Shown here piece by piece: positions 24,580 to 62,697 of a DNA stretch of 64,000 bases. Position numbers and translations under genes: made by a program. Numbering within the stretch: position 1 is the stretch's first letter; each line of letters begins with the position of its first letter. A model generated the notes under the pieces. That model was not told the DNA's origin. It searched no databases and saw only the letters and a program-made list of their open reading frames with translations. This DNA comes from Selaginella moellendorffii (Eukaryota; Plantae; Lycopodiophyta), in NCBI RefSeq assembly GCF_000143415.4, contig NW_003314383.1, positions 186,001-250,000 of the forward strand, in the 5' to 3' direction.

Positions 24580-24815
24580 AAGCATGTTTGTAATTTATAA
24601 ACACAAGATTAATCTTATTGCATATCAACCATTAGATTATAGAATAAAAAATAATATACTAGAAAGGGTTTAAGAAAGTTTGTAAATTATAAACATGTTT
24701 ATAAATTATAGATACAAGATTAATTTAAATGAATAACAACCATTAGATGGTAGAATATCCTAAAATATCCAAGTATATTCTAGATATATCCATTACCTGT
24801 TTAAGCAAACCAAAA
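24580..24815. repeat. Dispersed AT-rich repeat family with related copies at about 49640-49750, 50085-50290 and 51170-51290
   Basis: Shared core such as AGAATATCCTAAAATATCCAAGTATATT and AACCATTAGAT; some copies are inverted. Confidence 0.55.
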
Positions 24816-25989
24816 AGACATCTAAAAACTAGAGATTATCAACTTGTATCTATTACAAGCAATTTATAATCTGAATTTTGGGGGGAGGTACACCTCCCAA
24901 GAGAGAGAGGTTTACTTGGGGTGGGTGGCCTAGCAAAAAATTTTGCACACTTGTAAAATATATGAAAAAAAAACTAAATTATTATAACATATACGTGTGA
25001 CTTACAAAATAATGTTTTAACCACAACTTTTTTCTTATACATTTAGTGCCAACCACATATACATAACAAAGTCCATATTAACACCATATTAGGTATACAA
25101 TTTTTTGTGTTACATCTCCACATCAAATTTTTTTTACACATCAGCAAGGTTTAAAGTTTGGGTTAAGGCTTGTTTTTTAGTGTACAAGCTAGATTTTAAG
25201 CACCTTTTGGATACTATGGACTGAGTTCATTATTGGGGCACTTCCTTAGTGAGGATAGTAAAAAGTACTTTGAGACCAATTGGGTTTGCAATGAATGAAG
25301 AAATTTCTGTATCCAATGCCAAAAACCACTACATTTAATGGCCCAAACACCTAAAGAAATGTTTTGCCTTCACACTCTAATTTATTAAACTCACCACCAT
25401 ACTTTATTCAATCACCCTCACTGCCACACTCCAATTGCATTTGCTACCATGCTCCAATCTATTATACTCACCATTGTGTTAGATTAAGGCGCCACACTGC
25501 AAATAAATTGTGAGAAATGGGAAGTGCAATTAATTAATTGAATCACGGTGCTTATATTAGGGGGCACTACACTGTGATAAATGAGCCACAACTGAGATAA
25601 ATGAGTTACAACAGTGAAAAATAAAAAGAGAGAGATGATCACAATTTATGAGAATGAGAAAAAAAAAATACTAAAATTGCACTAATCTTATGTTTTCTAA
25701 GATGATGTGGCATAATGCTTATATAGCAATTTGAAGTATCATACCCCATGCATACATGGCATACCCCAAGATAATATCACATGTGTAAATATATAATGCT
25801 TTCATGTGCAATCACATATTTGTTGCCATATGTATCCAACAAACAAAAACTGTTGCTTCACCTATATATTTCAAAATGATAAGTAAATAATACATAAATA
25901 AATACATTATTTAATCAATTATTGTGGTAGATTAATTGAGGTAAAGACCAATACTTATGTATAGAATTAGATGGACTATACAAAAGCCC

Positions 25990-42222: not shown

Positions 42223-43008
42223 ATGGAAGAAGAGCAGTGGTACTGGAAGGCGCTCTGGCTGAACATCATCTTAGCTTTCTCCACCGCTGCGTCGCTGACG
42301 AGAATCACAGCACCATACGGTCGCCACACTCAAGCAGGAGCGTCTTCTTCCTTGGACGTCTGGGGGCCGAGCATGCCAGCCCGAGATGGATGGGTTCTCA
42401 TGGAAAGCCCGGCTCTCTGGTTCACTCTCCTCGTCTTCTCGGCCGGGAAGCACGCCAGCGAAACCGTCCCGCTCGTCCTCCTCCGACTTTTCCAGCTCCA
42501 CTACACGCACAGGGCTCTCATCTATCCGTTTCGCATGCGCTCAAGGGGCAAGACGATCTCCATCGCCATCGTCGCTCTCTCCTTCGTCTTCAACATCTAC
42601 AACGGATATCTCCAGGCGCGGTGGCTGTCCGAGTTTGGAATTTATCCCGACACTTGGCTCCGGAGTCCGCAGTTCGTCTCTGGAAGCTTGCTCTTTGCGG
42701 CCGGGATGGTGACCAACGTCTGGGCCGACTCGGTTCTTATTTCCTTGCGCAAGCCCGGCGAGGAGCGAGGGGGATATAAGTTGCCACAGGGGTGGCTCTT
42801 CTCGCTCGTTGCATGCCCGAATTACTCCGGAGAGATCCTCGAGTGGCTCGGCTGGGCTCTTCTCACTTGGTCCCCCGCCGGCCTCGTCTTCTTCATCTTC
42901 ACAGCCGCGAATCTCATCCCGCGAGCTGTGGCTCACCGCCGCTGGTATGTTTCAAAGTTTCCGGAGTTTCCAGCCTCTCGGCGAGCAGTGATCCCGTTCG
43001 TTCTCTAA
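42223..43008 (+). CDS. DET2: Steroid 5-alpha-reductase, intronless, 261 aa
   Basis: APYGRH; GWVLMESPALW; HYTHRALIYP; NGYLQARW; LRKPGE...GYKLPQGWLF...CPNYSGEILEWLG; NLIPRAVAHRRWY. Confidence 0.92.
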   Translation: MEEEQWYWKALWLNIILAFSTAASLTRITAPYGRHTQAGASSSLDVWGPSMPARDGWVLMESPALWFTLLVFSAGKHASETVPLVLLRLFQLHYTHRALIYPFRMRSRGKTISIAIVALSFVFNIYNGYLQARWLSEFGIYPDTWLRSPQFVSGSLLFAAGMVTNVWADSVLISLRKPGEERGGYKLPQGWLFSLVACPNYSGEILEWLGWALLTWSPAGLVFFIFTAANLIPRAVAHRRWYVSKFPEFPASRRAVIPFVL

Positions 43009-45473: not shown

Positions 45474-46846
45474 GGTAGGATCTAGAGATGGAGAAGAGAG
45501 GCAAGAAAGGGGGTTAAAATAAAAGGCTTGAATCTCGAGAGGAAGAAGCCATGGCCACACTTACTCGCAGCACAGTGGAGGGTGGTGGTGGCGATACCCC
45601 TGGTGGCGGGAGATTGTCCGCTTGTGCCATGCAATGCATGCCACCCTCCGCCCACGGCCCGCCATTCATATATTTCCCACTCCAAGGAACGGCTCAAAAG
45701 GTCTTTTCCATATTCACTTAATTAGTGCTAACTTTTAATTATAAATTTTATATGCTCAATGGTCTTTTATTTTGATCATAAAAAAGATAGCGATATCGCG
45801 TTCTTTGAACATCACTGGAGTGAAAGAACGTGAAGTTTACACGGAAAAGAAAAAAAAACAGGAAAAAGAAATAATAAGCAACCTGTCACCAATGGCTATA
45901 ACCCGGAGACCTCTTTCCAGAGGTGATGGGATTACGAACGTTCCTGTTTGATTGGCACGTTATTTATGAGATACATTCCAATAGCGACGTACCAAAACCT
46001 TTGGAACAACCTCTCATCCTCGATGGAAAGTTTTGCTATACACGGAACAAGAGAAACAAGCTTGGAAAAACTTACAAGTCACAGCAAGGCCGAAGCTTTG
46101 GATTTGCAGAGCCACATCACTGCGTGCTCAACGCAAATCATTGCAGCTTCGGCATGCACCGACTGATCCGGCCTTCGTCGTCAGCTGCTCCAGAACTGGA
46201 GAGTTCTTGATTCCCCTGAGCAGTTCCCCCGGCTCCAATGGCGCCACAATGAGTGCCGCAACGTGATCCATGGGCTTAGCTGGGTCAAAGTCCAGTCGCT
46301 TACAATTCCTAAAGTCATAGTGGGACGTATTCCACTTCACGGTAGGCTTGAACAACGGCGTTCATCAACTGCTGCGAGTGACAATTGCCTCCTACCAAAA
46401 ACTCGGCTGGCAGTCACCAGATCCTAAAAGAAATTTGAGTATATGTGCTGGAAACAAGGAAAGCATTACCTCTTTCAGGAAATATAGTCCGTCAAGCACA
46501 CTCGCTTCAAGAGTCCCCAGATCGCCTGGAGAGCGACCAGGAGGTCCAAGTCCACCTCCTTGACACTGCCCAGCTACCTCAAGATGCAGCGCTGCTTCTC
46601 GAGTGTGCTGGAGAAGAGATCCCCCACGTAGAGGATGCGATCCACGACACCGATATCAGTGAGAGTGAAGCTCCCAGACCCATAAACGTTTCTGAGACAT
46701 TTGTGCTCTCTACATTCCGCGACCACCTCGCGGGCCAAATCCTTGCAGCACCTCGCAAGTTTGTCATCCCTGGAGCGCAGCGCCTCCTTGCAACTTTGAG
46801 CATCTTATGCTTCATTATATTGATATAATTGATATATATTGTATTA

Positions 46847-48556
46847 ATGGAAAATAAGAACCTTGGCTTACAAGAATGTGTGCAACTGGTGAAATCTTGC
46901 AAGACTGTACACGAAGAAGCTGAGCGAGTCTATCTAACAGTGCGTAACTCCGGCCATCTCTCCAGTCCCGATGGGACGTTTCTCTCCAATTTGTTGCTCC
47001 ATATGTTTGTGAGCTGCGGGAGCCTCCAGCGTGCCCACCACATCTTTGACACCACGCATCCAAAGACTGCTTTCACTTGGGTCCTCTTGATCAATGGCTA
47101 TGCGCGAAGTGGACGCGTCGACAGCGCGAAAGAGCTCTTTGATCGGATCCCTCACAGAAACCTTGTGGCTTGGAATTCGATGCTCTCCGCATATGCCCAA
47201 AACGGGTATGTTAGAGATGCCACGGAGATATTCCACCAGATGCCCGAGTGGAGTGTCATCCCGTGGACTGAAATCCTAGCTGCGTTTTCCCGAGACGGGA
47301 ACACCCGCGAAGCCAGGTATTGGTTTGAAATTGCTGTGGAGAGAGACATTGTTTGCTGGAACGCGCTTCTTTCAGCATTTGCCTTGAAAGGACAACTTGA
47401 AGAGGCCAAACGAGTGTTTTACGCCATGCCACAGTGGAACTATTTCTCCTGGAATTTGATGCTCAGTGCGTACGTGAAGAACAATCTTATTCATGATGCA
47501 CTGGAGCTTTTCCTTCGTTTGGATGAGCAAGACACTGTCACTAGAAACACCATGCTTTCAGGATTTGGACAAAGTGGCGATATTGATCGAGCTAAGAAAC
47601 TGTTTGATCAAATGCCCGAGTGGAGTTTAGTGTCGTGGAATTCCATGCTCGCTGCTTATGCCCACGTTGGAGATTTGAGCTCCACTTTAAAAGTGTTTGA
47701 AACTATGAACTGTCGAGATCTCTTTTCATGGACTACACTTCTGGCTGCGTGGTCACAAACCTGGAACTTGGAAGAATCTAAGAAGATCTTTGACGCCATG
47801 CCCGAAAGAAACTTGGTCTCTTGGAATACACTCTTGTACGCGTATGCCCATTTTGGGCATATCTATGAAATGGAGGCTTTCCTGAGCGAAATGCCAGAAA
47901 AATCTTTAGTTTCATGGAACATTCTTCTTGCTGGTTACGGCCAGCGCAAGGAATTCAAAGCTGCCAGCAGCGTTTTTAACAACATGGTCCAAAGAGATAG
48001 CATCTCATGGAATCAGATGCTAGGAGCATTTGCACAAAAAGGATATCTACTTGAGGCTGTCCGGTTTCTAGATCGGATGCCCAAACTGGGCATGGCTTCT
48101 TGGAACACTTTGTTGGTAGCATTTGCACACAATGGCCACCACTGCACTGCTTTAGATCTCTTCTCCGTTATGCTTCTAAATGGTTTTGAAGTGGATGAGA
48201 TTTCTCTCATTTGCGTGCTAATTGCATGTAGTCGTGCCGGACGTTCCCAAAGAGCAAGAGTGTTCTTCCACTCGATCCAAACGGACTTTTGCTTTGCTCT
48301 AACGAGGCAGATCTTCAGCTGCATGGTTGATCTTCTTGGACGAGCTGGGCGCTTGAGAGACGCCGAGGATCTCGTCCAGCATATGCCTTTCCAGCCTGAA
48401 GTCACCGATTGGAGATGCATTCTAAGTGCTTGTAAAAGCCACAAGGACGATCAGTCGACAGCTCGAGCCGTAGAGAGAGTTCTTGGATTAGATCCTGTCA
48501 ATAATGCCGCGTTTGTGCTCCTCTCAAATTCAAAGATAAGAGAAAATCTCTGTTAA
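46847..48556 (+). CDS. PLS-class pentatricopeptide repeat protein ending in the E domain (no DYW), intronless
   Basis: About 31-aa repeats (VSWNSMLAAYA, FDAMPERNL); CMVDLLGRAGRLRDAEDLV...MPFQP...W...LSACK; ends AFVLLSNSKIRENLC*. Confidence 0.92.
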   Translation: MENKNLGLQECVQLVKSCKTVHEEAERVYLTVRNSGHLSSPDGTFLSNLLLHMFVSCGSLQRAHHIFDTTHPKTAFTWVLLINGYARSGRVDSAKELFDRIPHRNLVAWNSMLSAYAQNGYVRDATEIFHQMPEWSVIPWTEILAAFSRDGNTREARYWFEIAVERDIVCWNALLSAFALKGQLEEAKRVFYAMPQWNYFSWNLMLSAYVKNNLIHDALELFLRLDEQDTVTRNTMLSGFGQSGDIDRAKKLFDQMPEWSLVSWNSMLAAYAHVGDLSSTLKVFETMNCRDLFSWTTLLAAWSQTWNLEESKKIFDAMPERNLVSWNTLLYAYAHFGHIYEMEAFLSEMPEKSLVSWNILLAGYGQRKEFKAASSVFNNMVQRDSISWNQMLGAFAQKGYLLEAVRFLDRMPKLGMASWNTLLVAFAHNGHHCTALDLFSVMLLNGFEVDEISLICVLIACSRAGRSQRARVFFHSIQTDFCFALTRQIFSCMVDLLGRAGRLRDAEDLVQHMPFQPEVTDWRCILSACKSHKDDQSTARAVERVLGLDPVNNAAFVLLSNSKIRENLC

Positions 48557-48685
48557 ATCAAACTCCCTAGTTTTAGGATCACCAACTTTGATCCGCTAGC
48601 CTCATGTCATAGGCACTCGTTTCTAGTATTTAACATTGTTTCTAGAGCTTCTTTTCCTATCTCTCAATATAACCTTCCATTCTCT

Positions 48686-49556
48686 ATGGCTCACACTTTT
48701 CTCTTTGCTATTTCTCTCTTTGCTGTTCTTGCTAGCGTTGTTCTAGCTACCAACACCAACACCTCATGTTTCCCAGGTAAGAATCTACAAGCGATTTTAC
48801 AGCCAATCACAGGCTTTATGTTTGCAAGGCGATGCCACCGTCCAAATGTATAACGGCGACCTCAAACTCATGAGAGATCTCGAAGTTGGAGACAAGGTAT
48901 TCTATTGCTCTTAAGTTTCTCGAAAGCCCATCTAAACGTTCCAGATCTACAGGTTGCAGTGAGCAAAAACGTGTTCTCCGATGTCTATGCATTCGGCCAC
49001 AAGGACGCCGATGTGATCTCCGAGTTCATCCAGGTCCACACCGCCTCAGACATGATCGAGCTTAGCGAGGGCCACTTCATCCCAGTCGACGCCAAGGGAA
49101 AGCTTGTGTACAAGCGAGCCAAGGATCTCCAGGTTGGAGAAACTCTCTGGGGATCATCTCAAATCACTGGTAACATCATACTTCTTTTGAGACTTTGCTC
49201 TTACTTTGACAACTATAGAACTTTCCAAGGTGGAGAAGCTGGGCCTCTACAACCCATTCACTCTCTCCGGCAACATCATGGTTAACAACGTGGAGGCTTC
49301 CTCTCACAGCGAGTGGTTCCTGGACTCCCTCTTTGATGCCATTGGCGCAACTGAGTACCTCCCATATGCATACCAGGCCGTGCTCGCTCCACTTCGTGCC
49401 ATCTACAACATCGTCGGGAAGGAAATCTATGGAAAGGGTTATGCTGCCGTCAATTCTTGTGTCAACGTTGCTGAATTTGGAATGAAGCACGGAGGAAGCA
49501 TCGCTCTTGCTGTTGGAATCGCTGGAGTTGCAACAGCAATGCTGACGAAGGCTTGA
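48686..49556 (+). CDS. Secreted Hedgehog-type Hint (Hog) domain protein, copy 1, 237 aa. Exons 48686-48776, 48829-48896, 48953-49169, 49219-49556
   Basis: Four phase-consistent exons (714 nt) give a signal peptide, then TNTNTS-CFPGDATVQMYNGDLKLMRDLEVGDKV (Hint block A), FSDVYAFGH, IELSEGHFI (block B), AKDLQVGETL, GLYNPFTLSGNIMVNNVEASSH (Hint C-end), an SRR-like helical region and a hydrophobic tail. Confidence 0.92.
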
Positions 49557-49952
49557 TGAAAAACCAGAAGTAGAATAAATAACATCTTTTATGCTTTGAT
49601 TATTCCCCTTCTTTATTTATATCCAACTCTATTCTGAATGGTTTATTATTTGTTTAGTGGATATACCTAAAATATACTTGGATATTTTAGAATTTTTTAC
49701 CATCAAATGGTTATTATTCCTTTAGAATAATCTAGTGTTTATAATTTATGATTATAGCATATTCTAGCTTATTTAGCTTTTATACCATTAGGTTAAACTT
49801 ATTTTTATTAAAAACATGATGGTATGTGGTTATGCTCCAACTACTCTGTTTAGGAAAAACATTTTCTTGTAATACATAAATCATAATAATTTGCTATAAT
49901 ACAAACTAAGCAAACATGCAATATGGTCACAGTTTATTATTATTTATCAACC

Positions 49953-50075
49953 AAGGCTTGATGAACCATAAGTAAAATAAAATCTAAATTTCACAAAATG
50001 GAAAAAAAAAAAAGAAAACTGTATTCCATTATTTTGATTATTCCCCTTCTTTGTTTATATCTAACTCCCGATTTT
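49953..50075 (+). repeat. Remnant 3' end/3'UTR of a third Hog copy
   Basis: AAGGCTTGATGAA and TTTGATTATTCCCCTTCTTT match the stop and 3'UTR of copies 1 and 2. Confidence 0.6.
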
Positions 50076-50532
50076 ATATTCTAAATGGTTCATTTCTGGT
50101 TTTCTTAAGCAAACATCTTGGTAGTAAATATACTTAGAATATAGTTGAATATTCTATAATAGTTTACAGTTTAAAAGTTAATATTTATTTATAATAATAT
50201 CGTCATTAAATTTAAACATGATTATAAATTATAAAATTTTCCTAAACACCTTCTAGGTCTAACTTTTATGCCATTATATTAATCTTGTGTTTATTAAAAA
50301 TATTCTTAAACACAACAATTTGTTATTTGTTCTAAAACCACTTTTATAATGCTTTTGTATTATTAATATTAGTATATTTAAATATAAATATAAGTTGGCC
50401 TTTACATAAGTATATTTTAAATAATTAATTTAATATATTTTAAATAATATATTAAATTAAGTGATTAGTTTCAAAATTTGCAAGATTAGTTCCATGAATA
50501 TAATGAAAAATAAAATAAAATAAATATAGTAT

Positions 50533-51666: not shown

Positions 51667-53401
51667 TTAACACCATATCACATTACCATTCAAATCTAAC
51701 AATTTTGTGGAGATGTTTTTCATATCTCCAATAACTTTTGATAGTGCATAAGCAGCAAAGAAATATCTAACTTCCAACCAATTTTCAGGTTCTGGACATA
51801 TCACATTTAGATCATCACTGAAGTTAAACCCAATTTTTGCTATAAAATGTCGATTCCTAAACATAAATATTTAGATACTAAAATATAAAAATAAAAACTC
51901 ACAACGAATGATGATGAAAAATTGCCAAATAATCATCCAATCCAGCCACCCTTGAACCTGTAGAAAACATTTTAAAAAATTATTTAAAAAAATATAAAAG
52001 TTATTTACTGACCTAACTCAGAATACTTAAGGCTCATCCCAAGCGCTATAGGTCTTATTTGTTGAAGTTCAAATTCAGTAGTTTTAAGAATCCTAGCTGT
52101 TTGTAAAGCTTCCAGCACTTCCTAAACATAATAAAAGAATAAAATTAAAAAATTCAAGTGATATAATATAATACCATGATAGGAATGTTGTACATTGATT
52201 TCCTACTTTGGATGAACGTAGACAGTTTAGTCCCAGGGTCCTTTCCTAAATGCTGCTCTGAAAGTACAAAAACATTTTAGATTAAAAGCTAAAAATATTT
52301 TCTTGCCGAGAAAGATCCTAAACATCGCCTGTGTTGCCCATCTCATCACGTTGTTAGCTACAATTTGGGTTTTCACAACGCATCATTGCAAGGCCGCCAC
52401 ACTTGGTTTTTGAGCACGGAATGTATTTTGCATATGGAATTAAACGTCACGAGTAATAAGGAAGAATGATTTACTTGCGACTTGAGCAACATCATCTCTG
52501 TTATTCCCTCTGAATGCATTATGTCACATACGGCCGCGTCCTTGGCCACCCTGCCCTGGACACCAAGCTTGTCCCAAAGACGATTGTCAAAGACTGCCTT
52601 GGCAGGGACAAGCTTGGTGCCAGCCACACACGGCAGCACGTCGCGTAGAGCATCTTCGGCGAAAAAGAGGCCCATCTTTCTATTGATGCCAATACCGCGG
52701 AGATCCACCACGACGCACTTTCTGATCCCGATCGCGTCCACAGCGTTCAGCTCCTTGACAGGATCCTCTCCACGGTCATGAGACGCCTGGACGAACTTCC
52801 TGGCCGACAGTGTCATGGGGAAGTCGTCGTAGTTGACGACCCAGTCCAGAGAGCCATACTGCAATGCCTTGGTGGGAACCGCGAGAAGGATGTAGCCAGT
52901 GGAGACCCGATTCTGCCAGATGGATTCTTTATAGACGAGGACTTGTTTAGCATCAAGCTCTTCTAAAGTTCCATCGATCACGAATTCCGCTGGAGGACCC
53001 CGACACCGCAGGCCGAGCTCGATCGTGGAAATGCAGCCCACGGCTTCGATGCTCCTGATCTGGCATGGCTCCAGCGGCGTCATTGAAGGCTCCATTTCGT
53101 TGTCGTATAAGTAGGCTGGAATGCTCCAAGGCGCTCCCCAGTAAAGGGCATTTGCATGTGTACGACGCTGCTTGGGGCAGATGTTTCCATGAGCGTAGCT
53201 CAGGTGATCAAGCAACGTCGTGTCGGGGCAGCCGCATGCAGTCAACTGCCGGTTGTAGCAGATATCGCAGAAGAGGAACAAGGAGGTGGTGGTGTTATCA
53301 TAGACGAGCTTGAGAGGAGGAGCAGGAGCACGAGGCCGAGCTCGAGCCCGAGCTAGAGTTTCCGCGAGCGTGCTGCATCCGCAGGCAACTCCTGCGTCCA
53401 C
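51667..53401 (-). pseudogene. Unknown multi-exon gene with a BED-like zinc finger, probably disabled at exon 2. Exons about 53401-52475, 52427-52307, 52257-52175, 52121-52013, 51957-51903, 51856-51667
   Basis: Long GC-rich first exon plus five phase-matching small exons with 46-55-nt introns; CDIC-x17-HLSYAH motif; exon 2 acceptor reads CAA rather than CAG and the exon has an in-frame TGA (52385-52383); start codon not identified. Confidence 0.6.
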
Positions 53402-53784: not shown

Positions 53785-54639
53785 ATGGCTCACACTTTTT
53801 TCTTTGCTACTTCTCTCTTCGCTGTTCTTGCTAGCGTTGTTCTAGCGACCAACACCTCATGTTTCCCAGGTAAGAATCTGCAAGCGATTTTACAGCCAAT
53901 CACAGGCTTTATGTTTGCAAAGGCGATGCCACCGTCCAAATGTATAACGGCGACCTCAAACTCATGAGAGATCTCGAAGTTGGAGACAAGGTATTGTATT
54001 GCTCTTAAGTTTCTCGAAAGCCCATCTAAACGTTCCAGATCTACAGGTTGCAGTGAGCAAAAACGTGTTCTCCGATGTCTATGCATTCGGCCACAAGGAC
54101 GCTGATGTGAGCTCCGAGTTCATCCAGGTCCACACCGCCTCAGACATGATCGAGCTTAGCAAGGGCCACTTCATCCCAGTCGACGCCAAGGGAAAGCTTG
54201 TGTACAAGGGAGCCAAGGATCTCCAGGTTGGAGAAACTCTCTGGGGATCATCTGAAATCACTGGTAGCATCATACTTCTTTTGAGACATTGCTCTTACTT
54301 TGACAACTATAGAACTTTCCAAGGTGGAGAAGCTGGGCCTCTACAACCCATTCACTCTCTCCGGCAACATCATGGTTAACAACGTGGACACAGCGAGTGG
54401 TTCCTGGACTCTCTCTTTGATGCCATTGGCGCAACTGAGTACCTCCCATATGCATACCAGGCCGTGCTCGCTCCACTTCGCGCCACAACATCGTCGGGAA
54501 GGAAATCTATGGAAAGGGTTATGCTGCCGTCAATTCTTGTGTCAACATTGCTGAATTTGGAATTAAGCACGGAGGAAGCATCGCTCTTGCTGTTGGAATC
54601 GCTGGAGTTGCAACAGCAATGCTGACCACGAAGGCTTGA
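53785..54639 (+). pseudogene. Hog-domain gene copy 2, frameshifted. Exons 53785-53869, 53923-53990, 54047-54263, 54313-54639
   Basis: Near-identical to copy 1 including introns and upstream DNA; a 10-nt deletion at 54388/54389 removes the codons for ASS of the Hint C-end; 4-nt deletion at 54485/54486; premature stop 54552-54554. Confidence 0.88.
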
Positions 54640-62597: not shown

Positions 62598-62697
62598 NNN
62601 NNNNNNNNNNNNNNNNNNNNNNNNNNNNNNNNNNNNNNNNNNNNNNNNNNNNNNNNNNNNNNNNNNNNNNNNNNNNNNNNNNNNNNNNNNNNNNNNN
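62598..62697. other. Assembly gap (100 N)
   Basis: Run of N. Confidence 1.

What the first reader, a model, noticed from the sequence alone, without database searches (positions are those of the whole stretch)
48686..49556. Hedgehog-type Hint (Hog) autoprocessing gene in a land plant
Seen: a four-exon gene, fragmented in the ORF track, encoding signal peptide + CFPG-initiated Hint domain + SRR-like helices + hydrophobic tail (GSIALAVGIAGVATAMLTKA). Its host-type 49-56-nt introns argue against contamination. Known: Hedgehog Hint domains cleave before the first Cys via a thioester and transfer the N-terminal part to cholesterol, and seed plants lack hedgehog. As I recall, sequence surveys have noted Hog domains in red algae, protists and a moss or spikemoss (needs verifying), but I know of no function in plants. 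Inference: a plant secretory-pathway sterol- or lipid-ligation system.
Basis: partly seen in the sequence, partly recalled or inferred. Interest (0 to 1): 0.88.

Follow-up and report, generated by a model that had tools for sequence, protein, structure and literature searches.

The report
Known Selaginella short Hog gene
This is a real, expressed spikemoss gene for a hedgehog-type self-cleaving (Hog) domain with almost no cargo, but a near-identical sister gene from the same species was published in 2008 and the gene is already annotated, so only its function is still open.

Summary
A four-exon gene (48686-49556, + strand; GT-AG introns of 52, 56 and 49 nt) encodes a 237-aa protein. It has a signal peptide, a six-residue stretch (TNTNTS), a Hint domain starting at CFPG, a helical region like the sterol-recognition region, and a hydrophobic tail.

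- **Domain:** Pfam Hint scores 83 bits (E 3e-23). The AlphaFold2 model (pLDDT 88) matches Drosophila hedgehog C-domain structures 6TYY and 1AT0 best.
- **Expression:** RNA contigs from four studies show all three splice joints.
- **Constraint:** dN/dS among paralogues is 0.10-0.21.

It is not new. The protein is letter-for-letter Selaginella moellendorffii SELMODRAFT_448521 (XP_002991660.1, UniProt D8T7X4), already annotated as Hint-containing. Bürglin 2008 (PMC2362128) published "pSm Hog", a near-identical paralogue with the same short-cargo build.

Points not found in the papers searched:
- The gene heads a roughly 5-kb tandem array; copy B (53785-54639) is frameshifted.
- Across the 91 complete Hog modules collected here, His replaces hedgehog's general base D46, the C143 position varies, and His replaces Y144.
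- Many relatives carry a comparable C-terminal hydrophobic stretch.

Self-cleavage is likely. Sterol or lipid transfer is inferred only. First-stage notes also flag paralogues elsewhere in this genome.

The parts
48686..49556 (+). Whole coding region of the Hog gene SELMODRAFT_448521. Exons are 48686-48776, 48829-48896, 48953-49169 and 49219-49556; the stop codon is at 49554-49556.
   Evidence: Spliced translation of 237 aa is identical to P0179. Splice joints are seen in RNA contigs.
48659..49702 (+). Approximate transcript extent, with 3' ends near 49627 and 49702.
   Evidence: The furthest RNA contig ends are X7 record 11 starting at 48659, X1 record 8 ending at 49627 and X5 record 10 ending at 49702. 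Contig ends are not mapped transcript ends.
48686..48748 (+). Predicted signal peptide, residues 1-21 (MAHTFLFAISLFAVLASVVLA). Cleavage after V-L-A is an inference.
   Evidence: Hydrophobic N-terminus (Kyte-Doolittle 3.0 over 10 residues). All Selaginella paralogues share this build. No signal-peptide predictor was available.
48749..48766 (+). Mini-cargo T22-N-T-N-T-S27, which contains the N-x-S/T sequon N25-T-S.
   Evidence: Read from the sequence. Paralogues carry TNTNNS, TNNNNS, TNTS, TNTTG or TNNQNNTG at the same place.
48767..48769 (+). Cys28, equivalent to C1 of hedgehog HhC. It is the predicted nucleophile, and the scissile bond is S27|C28.
   Evidence: Aligned with C1 of 1AT0 and 6TYY. 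Invariant in alignment A2.
48767..49316 (+). Hint domain, residues 28-158 (spliced across introns 1-3).
   Evidence: Pfam PF01079 at 83 bits. Foldseek best hits are 6TYY and 1AT0 with target TM-score 0.82 and rmsd 2.6-2.9 A.
48998..49000 (+). His69, at the position of the hedgehog general base D46 (D303).
   Evidence: HMMER alignment to 6TYY, the D46H mutant, and to 1AT0. His in 90 of 90 full-length family members.
49064..49075 (+). S91-E-G-H94, the equivalent of the TxxH motif (block B).
   Evidence: Alignment. The first position is T or S in 91/91 members and His94 is in 91/91.
49296..49310 (+). Motif J as A152-S-S-H-S156. S154 sits at the hedgehog C143 position and H155 at the Y144 position.
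   Evidence: Alignment. Position 154 is variable (S32/A21/C15/V12/T11) and H155 is His in 86/91.
49317..49466 (+). Helical adduct/sterol-recognition-like region, residues 159-208, with the conserved pattern W158-F-L-D161 ... L-P-x-x-Y-Q ... P-x-R.
   Evidence: AF2 helices with pLDDT 90-93. Predicted hedgehog models align up to query residue 190-207. Conserved columns.
49497..49544 (+). C-terminal hydrophobic stretch S219-L234, followed by T-K-A. It is a probable membrane anchor; a GPI signal is not excluded.
   Evidence: Kyte-Doolittle 2.0 over 17 residues, and many relatives carry a comparable hydrophobic stretch near the C-terminus, often with basic residues after it. AF2 helix 209-236.
53785..54639 (+). 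Tandem copy B, frameshifted. It has a 6-nt in-frame deletion in exon 1, a 10-nt deletion removing codons A152-S154, and a 4-nt deletion further on.
   Evidence: RefSeq models it as P0167 (XP_024521177.1) with a shifted C-terminus.

Best explanation
**Identity.** This is SELMODRAFT_448521, the first unit of a tandem array of 'short Hog' genes in Selaginella moellendorffii. It belongs to the archaeplastid Hog family that Bürglin described in 2008.

**Most likely mechanism.**
1. The precursor enters the ER and the signal peptide is removed after Ala21 (inferred).
2. The Hint domain makes an N-to-S acyl shift. Cys28 attacks the Ser27 carbonyl, helped by S91-x-x-H94, and forms a thioester. This is inferred from conserved residues and fold.
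3. A hydroxyl nucleophile resolves the thioester. It would be held by the helical region 159-208 at the membrane surface and activated by His69. The nucleophile is most plausibly a membrane sterol or another lipid. This is inference only.

**Products.** One product would be a very small, probably N-glycosylated peptide (TNTNTS) carrying the adduct. The other would be a membrane-tethered Hog domain.

**My odds.** Identity as a Hog gene about 0.97; self-cleavage at S27|C28 about 0.7; sterol or lipid adduct about 0.35-0.4.
For: - **Domain and fold:** Pfam Hint at 83 bits. Best solved-structure matches are hedgehog HhC 6TYY and 1AT0. The 30 AlphaFold Swiss-Prot hits listed are all hedgehog or warthog proteins, and the alignment reaches into the SRR.
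- **Conserved residues:** C28, F29, H69, H94, H155, S156 and D161 are invariant over 53 diverse relatives. Over 91 full-length modules C1 is 91/91, His69 90/90 and (T/S)xxH 91/91.
- **His at the general-base position:** The D303H (D46H) swap keeps activity and widens sterol tolerance in Drosophila HhC (PMC9163320). D46H processes in cells (PMC12054796).
- **Purifying selection:** dN/dS is 0.10-0.21 overall and 0.11 in the Hint domain.
- **Expression:** Spliced transcripts appear in four studies, and word depth is far above the neighbouring PPR gene in the same runs.
- **Paralogues:** Selaginella paralogues have the same Hog module behind Pro-rich or small Cys-rich cargo. This fits a cargo-processing module.
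Against: - No experiment exists on any plant Hog; the paper searches found none.
- The position of hedgehog C143 is Ser here and is A or V in about a third of relatives. C143 is required in SHh, where it forms a branched thioester. The hedgehog mechanism therefore cannot carry over unchanged.
- The residue before the Cys is Ser, not the hedgehog Gly.
- Pfam's match stops at profile position 163 of 213, so the SRR likeness rests on predicted structures and a weak HMMER stretch.
- A six-residue cargo has no obvious use.
- dN/dS in the signal-peptide and cargo part is relaxed (0.46-1.06 on few sites).
- Depth comparisons are weak by the tool's own warning.
Confidence: 0.6

Rival explanations
1. 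The Hog domain is a self-cleaving module without lipid transfer. The thioester is resolved by water or a small soluble nucleophile. In cargo-bearing paralogues, the Hog domain would then only release a peptide from a membrane-tethered precursor. In this mini-cargo copy, the membrane-anchored Hog domain itself, perhaps with its new N-terminal Cys, would be the functional product.
For: - The C143-equivalent is not conserved.
- The hedgehog SRR is not matched by Pfam.
- The C-terminal anchor gives a release-from-membrane logic.
- The cargo is tiny and weakly constrained.
- 'Hog only' and 'Short-hog' genes are tabulated in nematodes (PMC2362128). Short Hint proteins of 220-240 aa form clusters in rotifers and haptophytes.
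Against: - Region 159-208 is strongly conserved (W158, D161, P174, Y177, Q178, P183, R185). It is confidently folded and under constraint (dN/dS 0.24). That is unexpected if it had no substrate-handling role.
- The invariant His at the general-base position suggests activation of an incoming nucleophile.
Confidence: 0.27
2. The array copies are decaying, catalytically dead remnants. They are transcribed but have no processing function.
For: Copy B in this window is frameshifted. The cargo is reduced to six residues. The residue before the Cys is Ser rather than Gly.
Against: - dN/dS is 0.10-0.21 between paralogues, with no non-synonymous change in the Hint or ARR parts between copy A and P0160.
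- All family-invariant residues are present.
- The reading frame is intact on both haplotypes.
- Transcripts are spliced and abundant.
Confidence: 0.08
3. The gene is contaminant or recently transferred foreign DNA in the assembly.
For: Hog domains are best known from animals, and RefSeq names such as 'warthog protein 6' look animal.
Against: - The same gene order (rRNA methylase, ThiD/E, Steroid_dh, G3P dehydrogenase, PPR, Hog) is found on two haplotype scaffolds.
- There are many paralogue models on at least nine scaffolds.
- Selaginella copies form one clade beside moss and clubmoss sequences.
- Related proteins occur in Ceratodon, Diphasiastrum, Riccia, a green alga and red algae.
- RNA from four studies holds the spliced form.
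Confidence: 0.01

Closest known systems
pSm Hog of Selaginella moellendorffii (Bürglin 2008, BMC Genomics 9:127; ESTs DN839649 and DN837769)
   Same: Same species and same gene family, with the same build: signal peptide, a few residues (ATNTS), CFPG Hog domain and the ...GIAGVATAMLATKA tail. It matches the 236-aa paralogue type P0178/P0180/P0182 at its N-terminus, and a spot check of other stretches fits that type as well. Motif J with Ser in place of Cys was already noted there.
   Different: The window gene is a different array member: TNTNTS instead of TNTS, 237 rather than 236 aa, and a few substitutions. In the parts read, the paper does not describe the tandem array, the membrane tail, the His at the D46 position, or expression.
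Hedgehog C-terminal autoprocessing domain (HhC; PDB 1AT0, 6TYY; Pfam PF01079)
   Same: The Hint fold (target TM-score 0.82). The Cys in the C-F-P motif at the start. (T/S)xxH. The G-x-Y-x-P-x-T-x-x-G and V-N-x-V-x-A-S motifs. A helical extension that overlays the first SRR helices in predicted models. The secretory context.
   Different: - No Hedge (HH_signal) cargo.
- His instead of Asp at D46.
- Ser instead of Cys at C143, and His instead of Tyr at Y144.
- Ser instead of Gly before the Cys.
- About 24% sequence identity.
- Adduct unknown.
Nematode hedgehog-related Hog proteins (warthog, groundhog, quahog, 'Hog only', 'Short-hog')
   Same: A Hog module with an adduct-recognition region of unknown specificity, and lineage-specific gene expansion. 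'Hog only' and 'Short-hog' classes are tabulated. C. elegans warthog models are among the best structural hits.
   Different: There is no Wart or Ground domain, so the RefSeq name 'warthog protein 6' reflects best-hit naming only. The plant copies group apart from animals: Bürglin placed the root between the red alga/plant sequences and the rest.
Inteins and bacterial intein-like (BIL) domains
   Same: The Hint fold and the first acyl-shift chemistry. They are second-tier structural hits (6Y75, 6RIZ, 2LWY).
   Different: Judged by eye from the sequence, there is no C-extein and no intein-like His-Asn followed by a nucleophile at the end of the Hint core. Hedgehog-type motifs and Pfam PF01079, not the intein families, are matched.

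Membership tests
Hog domain (Hedgehog-type Hint plus SRR/ARR; Pfam PF01079) | Sequence match to the Hint profile above the curated cut-off | tested here: met
   83 bits against a cut-off of 29.7, E 3e-23, residues 24-158 on profile positions 9-163 of 213.
Hog domain (Hedgehog-type Hint plus SRR/ARR; Pfam PF01079) | Hint fold nearest to hedgehog HhC rather than to inteins | tested here: met
   Foldseek against the PDB: 6TYY E 2e-11 and 1AT0 E 8e-11, target TM-score 0.82. BIL domains and inteins start at E 2e-7.
Hog domain (Hedgehog-type Hint plus SRR/ARR; Pfam PF01079) | N-terminal nucleophilic Cys (C1) at the domain start | tested here: met
   C28 aligns with C1 and is invariant in the family.
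Hog domain (Hedgehog-type Hint plus SRR/ARR; Pfam PF01079) | TxxH motif (T69, H72) | tested here: met
   S91-E-G-H94, with Ser for Thr. The family has T53/S38 at the first position and His in 91/91.
Hog domain (Hedgehog-type Hint plus SRR/ARR; Pfam PF01079) | Helical sterol/adduct-recognition region after the Hint core | tested here: inconclusive
   Confident helices at 161-207. Predicted hedgehog models align to query residue 190-207. Bürglin reports motif K in moss and red-alga Hogs. Pfam's SRR part, profile positions 164-213, is not matched, and no solved SRR structure exists.
Animal Hedgehog autoprocessing mechanism (cholesterolysis) | Asp general base D46 (D303) | tested here: not met
   His69 here, and His in 90/90 relatives. 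The D46H swap is active in Drosophila and human Hh, so function may be kept.
Animal Hedgehog autoprocessing mechanism (cholesterolysis) | Cys143 of the SCYA motif (branched thioester intermediate) | tested here: not met
   Ser154 here. The family has S32/A21/C15/V12/T11. C143A and C143D block SHh processing.
Animal Hedgehog autoprocessing mechanism (cholesterolysis) | Covalent sterol ester on the N-terminal product | not testable with these tools
   This needs biochemistry or mass spectrometry.
Hedgehog ligand proteins (Hh proper) | N-terminal Hedge signalling domain (PF01085) | tested here: not met
   Only six residues lie between the signal peptide and Cys28, and Pfam finds Hint alone.
Inteins | Insertion in a host protein with a C-extein and a terminal Asn plus downstream nucleophile | tested here: not met
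   Read by eye from the sequence: there is no host protein on either side, and the Hint core ends ...VNNVEASSHS and runs into helices and a hydrophobic tail.

The most novel reading that the evidence does not exclude
The mini-cargo array could be a dedicated factory for a so far unknown class of plant membrane molecule. That molecule would be an N-glycosylated hexapeptide esterified to a phytosterol, made by a Hog clade that works without the hedgehog C143 branched intermediate and uses a His/His active site (His69, His155). The Pro-rich and Cys-rich paralogues would then be sterol-anchored counterparts of GPI-anchored arabinogalactan peptides and of secreted Cys-rich peptide signals.
Probability: 0.15. 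Interest if true: 0.8.

Novelty: already known. Interest (0 to 1): 0.3.

Why it matters
Protein sterylation by a Hog domain has been shown only for animal hedgehog. What the many non-animal Hog domains attach, if anything, has been open since at least 2008.

This Selaginella gene is a compact natural test case. It encodes 237 aa with a six-residue cargo. It carries a natural version of the engineered D46H general-base swap and has no Cys at position 143. It could therefore test two things. One is whether plants esterify peptides to phytosterols. The other is whether the recently proposed C143 branched intermediate is dispensable in other Hog clades.

As a genome-scan finding it is not a discovery. 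The gene is annotated and its sister copy is published.

Tried and rejected
- **Full protein by reference.** Searching the whole spliced protein by reference was not possible, so I searched the exons apart. I recovered the full protein as P0179 through an exon-4 search.
- **Local alignment.** A first all-against-all MAFFT L-INS-i run timed out. I replaced it with hmmalign to a seed profile.
- **Contamination or HGT.** Rejected on synteny in two haplotypes, family size and phylogeny.
- **Intein reading.** Rejected: no exteins, and hedgehog-type motifs are present.
- **GPI-signal reading of the tail.** Considered and not excluded. No predictor was available. Basic residues after the hydrophobic stretch in many relatives favour a transmembrane anchor.
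- **AFDB cluster search.** It gave no organism names, so it did not help with taxonomic range.
- **The co-amplified minus-strand ORF (52373-53401).** It has no Pfam hit and no meaningful atlas hit.
- **Paper searches.** Searches for functional work on plant Hog proteins found nothing beyond Bürglin 2008. The JACS 2019 D46H paper is not held. PMC13738340 says nothing on phytosterols.
- **Active-site geometry.** I could not measure it because model coordinates are not exposed.

Full report
**1. What is in the sequence**

The stretch 48686-49556 holds a four-exon gene on the + strand. The exons are 48686-48776, 48829-48896, 48953-49169 and 49219-49556. The introns are 52, 56 and 49 nt, all GT-AG. 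The spliced reading frame is 714 nt and encodes 237 aa.

The product begins with a hydrophobic N-terminus, MAHTFLFAISLFAVLASVVLA. Six residues follow (TNTNTS), then Cys28 in the motif CFPG. The protein ends with ...KHGGSIALAVGIAGVATAMLTKA.

**2. It is transcribed and spliced as predicted**

RNA-type runs from several studies hold 50-60% of the sampled words of the genomic stretch, as expected for the exons alone. I laid contigs of four runs from four studies on 48400-49900. Each of the three joints was found exactly, each in three of the four runs (skips of 52, 56 and 49 nt with GT..AG ends).

Contig ends lie near 48659 on the 5' side and near 49627 and 49702 on the 3' side. Word depth over the exons is hundreds to tens of thousands. 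The PPR gene just upstream shows 8-20 in the same runs. The tool warns that such depth comparisons are weak.

Loose ends at 49429 and 49544 continue into sequence that fits other paralogues: ...AEGYAAMDS... and ...ATKA-stop. Other family members are therefore expressed too.

**3. Identity**

- Exon by exon, Pfam Hint (PF01079) is hit collinearly: 15, 17 and 26 bits on profile positions 17-38, 47-91 and 133-163.
- An exhaustive exon-4 search found 454 relatives at E <= 0.001.
- Cluster look-ups named the nearest ones as Selaginella moellendorffii proteins.
- One of them, P0179, is identical to my spliced model. It is EFJ07231.1 / XP_002991660.1 / SELMODRAFT_448521 / UniProt D8T7X4, named 'warthog protein 6' or 'Hint domain-containing protein'.
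- It lies on scaffold GL377687.1 of GCA_000143415.2 at about 234.7 kb.
- The full protein scores 83 bits (E 3e-23) on Pfam Hint, against a cut-off of 29.7.

**4. Fold**

I built an alignment of 53 diverse relatives (A2). With it, AlphaFold2 gives a confident model with mean pLDDT 88 and pTM 0.83. It has a beta-rich core at 34-153 and helices at 161-166, 170-180, 182-191, 193-207 and 209-236.

The best solved-structure matches are the Drosophila hedgehog C-domain. 6TYY scores E 2e-11 and 1AT0 scores E 8e-11, with target TM-score 0.82 and rmsd 2.6-2.9 A. Bacterial intein-like domains and inteins follow at E 2e-7 or weaker.

Against AlphaFold Swiss-Prot, all 30 hits listed are hedgehog or C. elegans warthog proteins. 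The aligned query range runs to residue 190-207. That is 30-50 residues beyond the Hint core and into the region where hedgehog has its sterol-recognition region. Both sides there are predictions, and Pfam's own match stops at profile position 163 of 213. 'SRR-like' is therefore supported but not proven.

**5. Already published**

Bürglin (BMC Genomics 2008, PMC2362128) reported Hog domains in Physcomitrella patens, Selaginella moellendorffii and S. lepidophylla, as well as in red algae and many protists. He found none in Arabidopsis or other higher plants.

His supplementary table gives 'pSm Hog' from ESTs DN839649 and DN837769. The sequence reads ...MAHTFFFATSLFAVLASVVLATNTS CFPGDATVQMYNGDLKLMRDLEVGDK... 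and ends ...GIAGVATAMLATKA. This is the same short-cargo family. Its N-terminus matches the 236-aa paralogue type P0178/P0180/P0182. In my notes I took it to be that same type after a spot check of other stretches; I did not align the whole sequence.

He also noted that moss and red-alga Hogs keep motifs J and K, with the motif-J Cys changed to Ser, Thr or Asp. I found no paper with functional work on a plant Hog.

**6. Catalytic residues**

HMMER aligns Cys28 with C1 of hedgehog HhC. It aligns S91-E-G-H94 with T69-x-x-H72 and His69 with the general base D46. It aligns A152-S-S-H-S156 with A-S-C143-Y-A.

The mutant structure 6TYY (D46H) scores better than wild-type 1AT0 because the plant protein carries that His naturally.

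| Position (hedgehog numbering) | Residue here | 91 relatives with a complete Hog module |
|---|---|---|
| C1 | Cys28 | 91/91 by selection |
| D46 | His69 | His 90/90 |
| T69 | Ser91 | T 53, S 38 |
| H72 | His94 | His 91/91 |
| S142 | Ser153 | Ser 88/91 |
| C143 | Ser154 | S 32, A 21, C 15, V 12, T 11 |
| Y144 | His155 | His 86/91 |

D161 is also Asp in 89 of the 89 modules that have a residue there.

The review PMC9163320 reports that D303H (D46H) keeps structure and activity and widens sterol tolerance. PMC12054796 shows that D46H processes in cells. It also shows that C143A and C143D do not, and proposes a branched thioester on C143.

My reading is this. Step 1 chemistry is very likely kept. 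The general base is a natural His. A C143-type intermediate cannot be general in this clade, because a third of members have Ala or Val there.

**7. Selection and family**

I recovered the CDS of four paralogues from their loci; they have the same three intron positions. Nei-Gojobori dN/dS is 0.10-0.21 for all pairs. Against the 73%-identical paralogue P0162 the values by region are as follows.

| Region | dN/dS against P0162 |
|---|---|
| Hint domain | 0.11 |
| Helical region | 0.24 |
| Tail | 0.20 |
| Signal peptide plus cargo | 0.46 |

A maximum-likelihood tree of Hog modules puts all Selaginella copies in one clade (support 100/100) beside Ceratodon and Diphasiastrum sequences. Within Selaginella there are four groups:
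- the S|C mini-cargo array copies;
- a G|C mini-cargo pair (TNTTG, TNNQNNTG);
- a Pro-rich cargo group (for example ...PPPPATPPPGTPPPPATPATPG|CFPG);
- a small Cys-rich cargo group.

The module is thus used behind very different short secreted peptides in one species.

Named relatives also come from Riccia fluitans, the green alga Sanguina aurantia and red algae. No fern or seed plant appeared among the named hits. Most hits are unnamed, so absence is not shown.

**8. Genomic setting**

A second copy lies at 53785-54639 and is 95% identical over the aligned unit. It has a 6-nt in-frame deletion in exon 1. A 10-nt deletion removes exactly codons A152-S154, and a further 4-nt deletion leaves the frame shifted. 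RefSeq models it as a 203-aa 'isoform X3' with a nonsense tail (P0167).

The other haplotype scaffold, GL377679.1, has the same gene order and an intact 236-aa gene at the second position. Further along GL377687.1 the Hog genes recur about every 5.1 kb. Each recurs together with a minus-strand ORF of about 340 aa that is 92-94% identical between units and has no Pfam or atlas match.

**9. How it most likely works**

*Shown:* the gene structure, splicing, Hog fold, conserved residues and purifying selection.

*Inferred:*
- signal-peptide cleavage after Ala21;
- an acyl shift at S27|C28;
- resolution of the thioester by a nucleophile held by the conserved helical region next to the membrane, to which the C-terminal hydrophobic stretch tethers the protein. 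Many relatives have a comparable stretch, often followed by basic residues.

A sterol is the most economical guess for the nucleophile, by analogy with hedgehog and because of the natural His at the general-base position. Nothing here tests it.

The products would be a tiny TNTNTS peptide with an N-x-S/T sequon, and a membrane-bound Hog domain. The main rival is cleavage without lipid transfer, with the anchored Hog domain or the released peptide as the point of the system. A dead-remnant reading is unlikely given the constraint.

**10. Verdict**

Novelty is 'already known'. The residual interest lies in the open question of what non-animal Hog domains attach, for which this minimal gene is a convenient test object.

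First-stage notes also flag paralogues on other pieces of this genome and the cargo and catalytic-residue points on this same stretch.

Noticed in passing
window 53785-54639 (+): Tandem copy B of the Hog gene is frameshifted. A 10-nt deletion removes codons A152-S154 of motif J, and a 4-nt deletion follows. RefSeq still models it as 'warthog protein 6 isoform X3' (P0167). The other haplotype has an intact 236-aa gene at the same position (P0178).
   Followed up: yes
window 52373-53401 (-); L002 8565-9563, 13649-14647, 18574-19571: A roughly 340-aa minus-strand ORF with no Pfam or atlas match is co-amplified with the Hog gene in every ~5.1-kb array unit (92-94% identical copies). It is transcribed divergently from the next Hog copy, with about 380 nt between the starts. 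Its function is unknown.
   Followed up: partly
window about 42223-43008 (+); L001 3538-4323: A 261-aa gene with Pfam Steroid_dh (PF02544, the 3-oxo-5-alpha-steroid 4-dehydrogenase family) lies about 6 kb upstream of the Hog gene and is syntenic on both haplotypes. This is probably coincidence, but it is a sterol/polyprenol-type reductase next to a putative sterol-using module.
   Followed up: no
window 46829-48556 (+): A PPR gene (9 PPR repeats, Pfam 287 bits) ends only 130 nt before the Hog start codon. One RNA contig (X1 record 1, depth 19.5) runs from the PPR 3' end to 48699, across the Hog 5' end.
   Followed up: partly
window 49595-49817, 50033-50303, 24594-24816 (-): The AT-rich 3' flank of copy A is repeated about 440 nt downstream and, inverted, at 24.6-24.8 kb (65-85% identity). 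It may be a small dispersed repeat.
   Followed up: no
P0003, P0163, P0164 (other S. moellendorffii scaffolds): Paralogues carry a 30-70-residue Pro-rich, (A/T/S)-P-type cargo directly before G|CFPG. This resembles hydroxyproline-rich or arabinogalactan peptide motifs. If the Hog module adds a lipid, these would be lipid-anchored HRGP-like peptides.
   Followed up: partly
window 62598-62697: There is a 100-N assembly gap.
   Followed up: no
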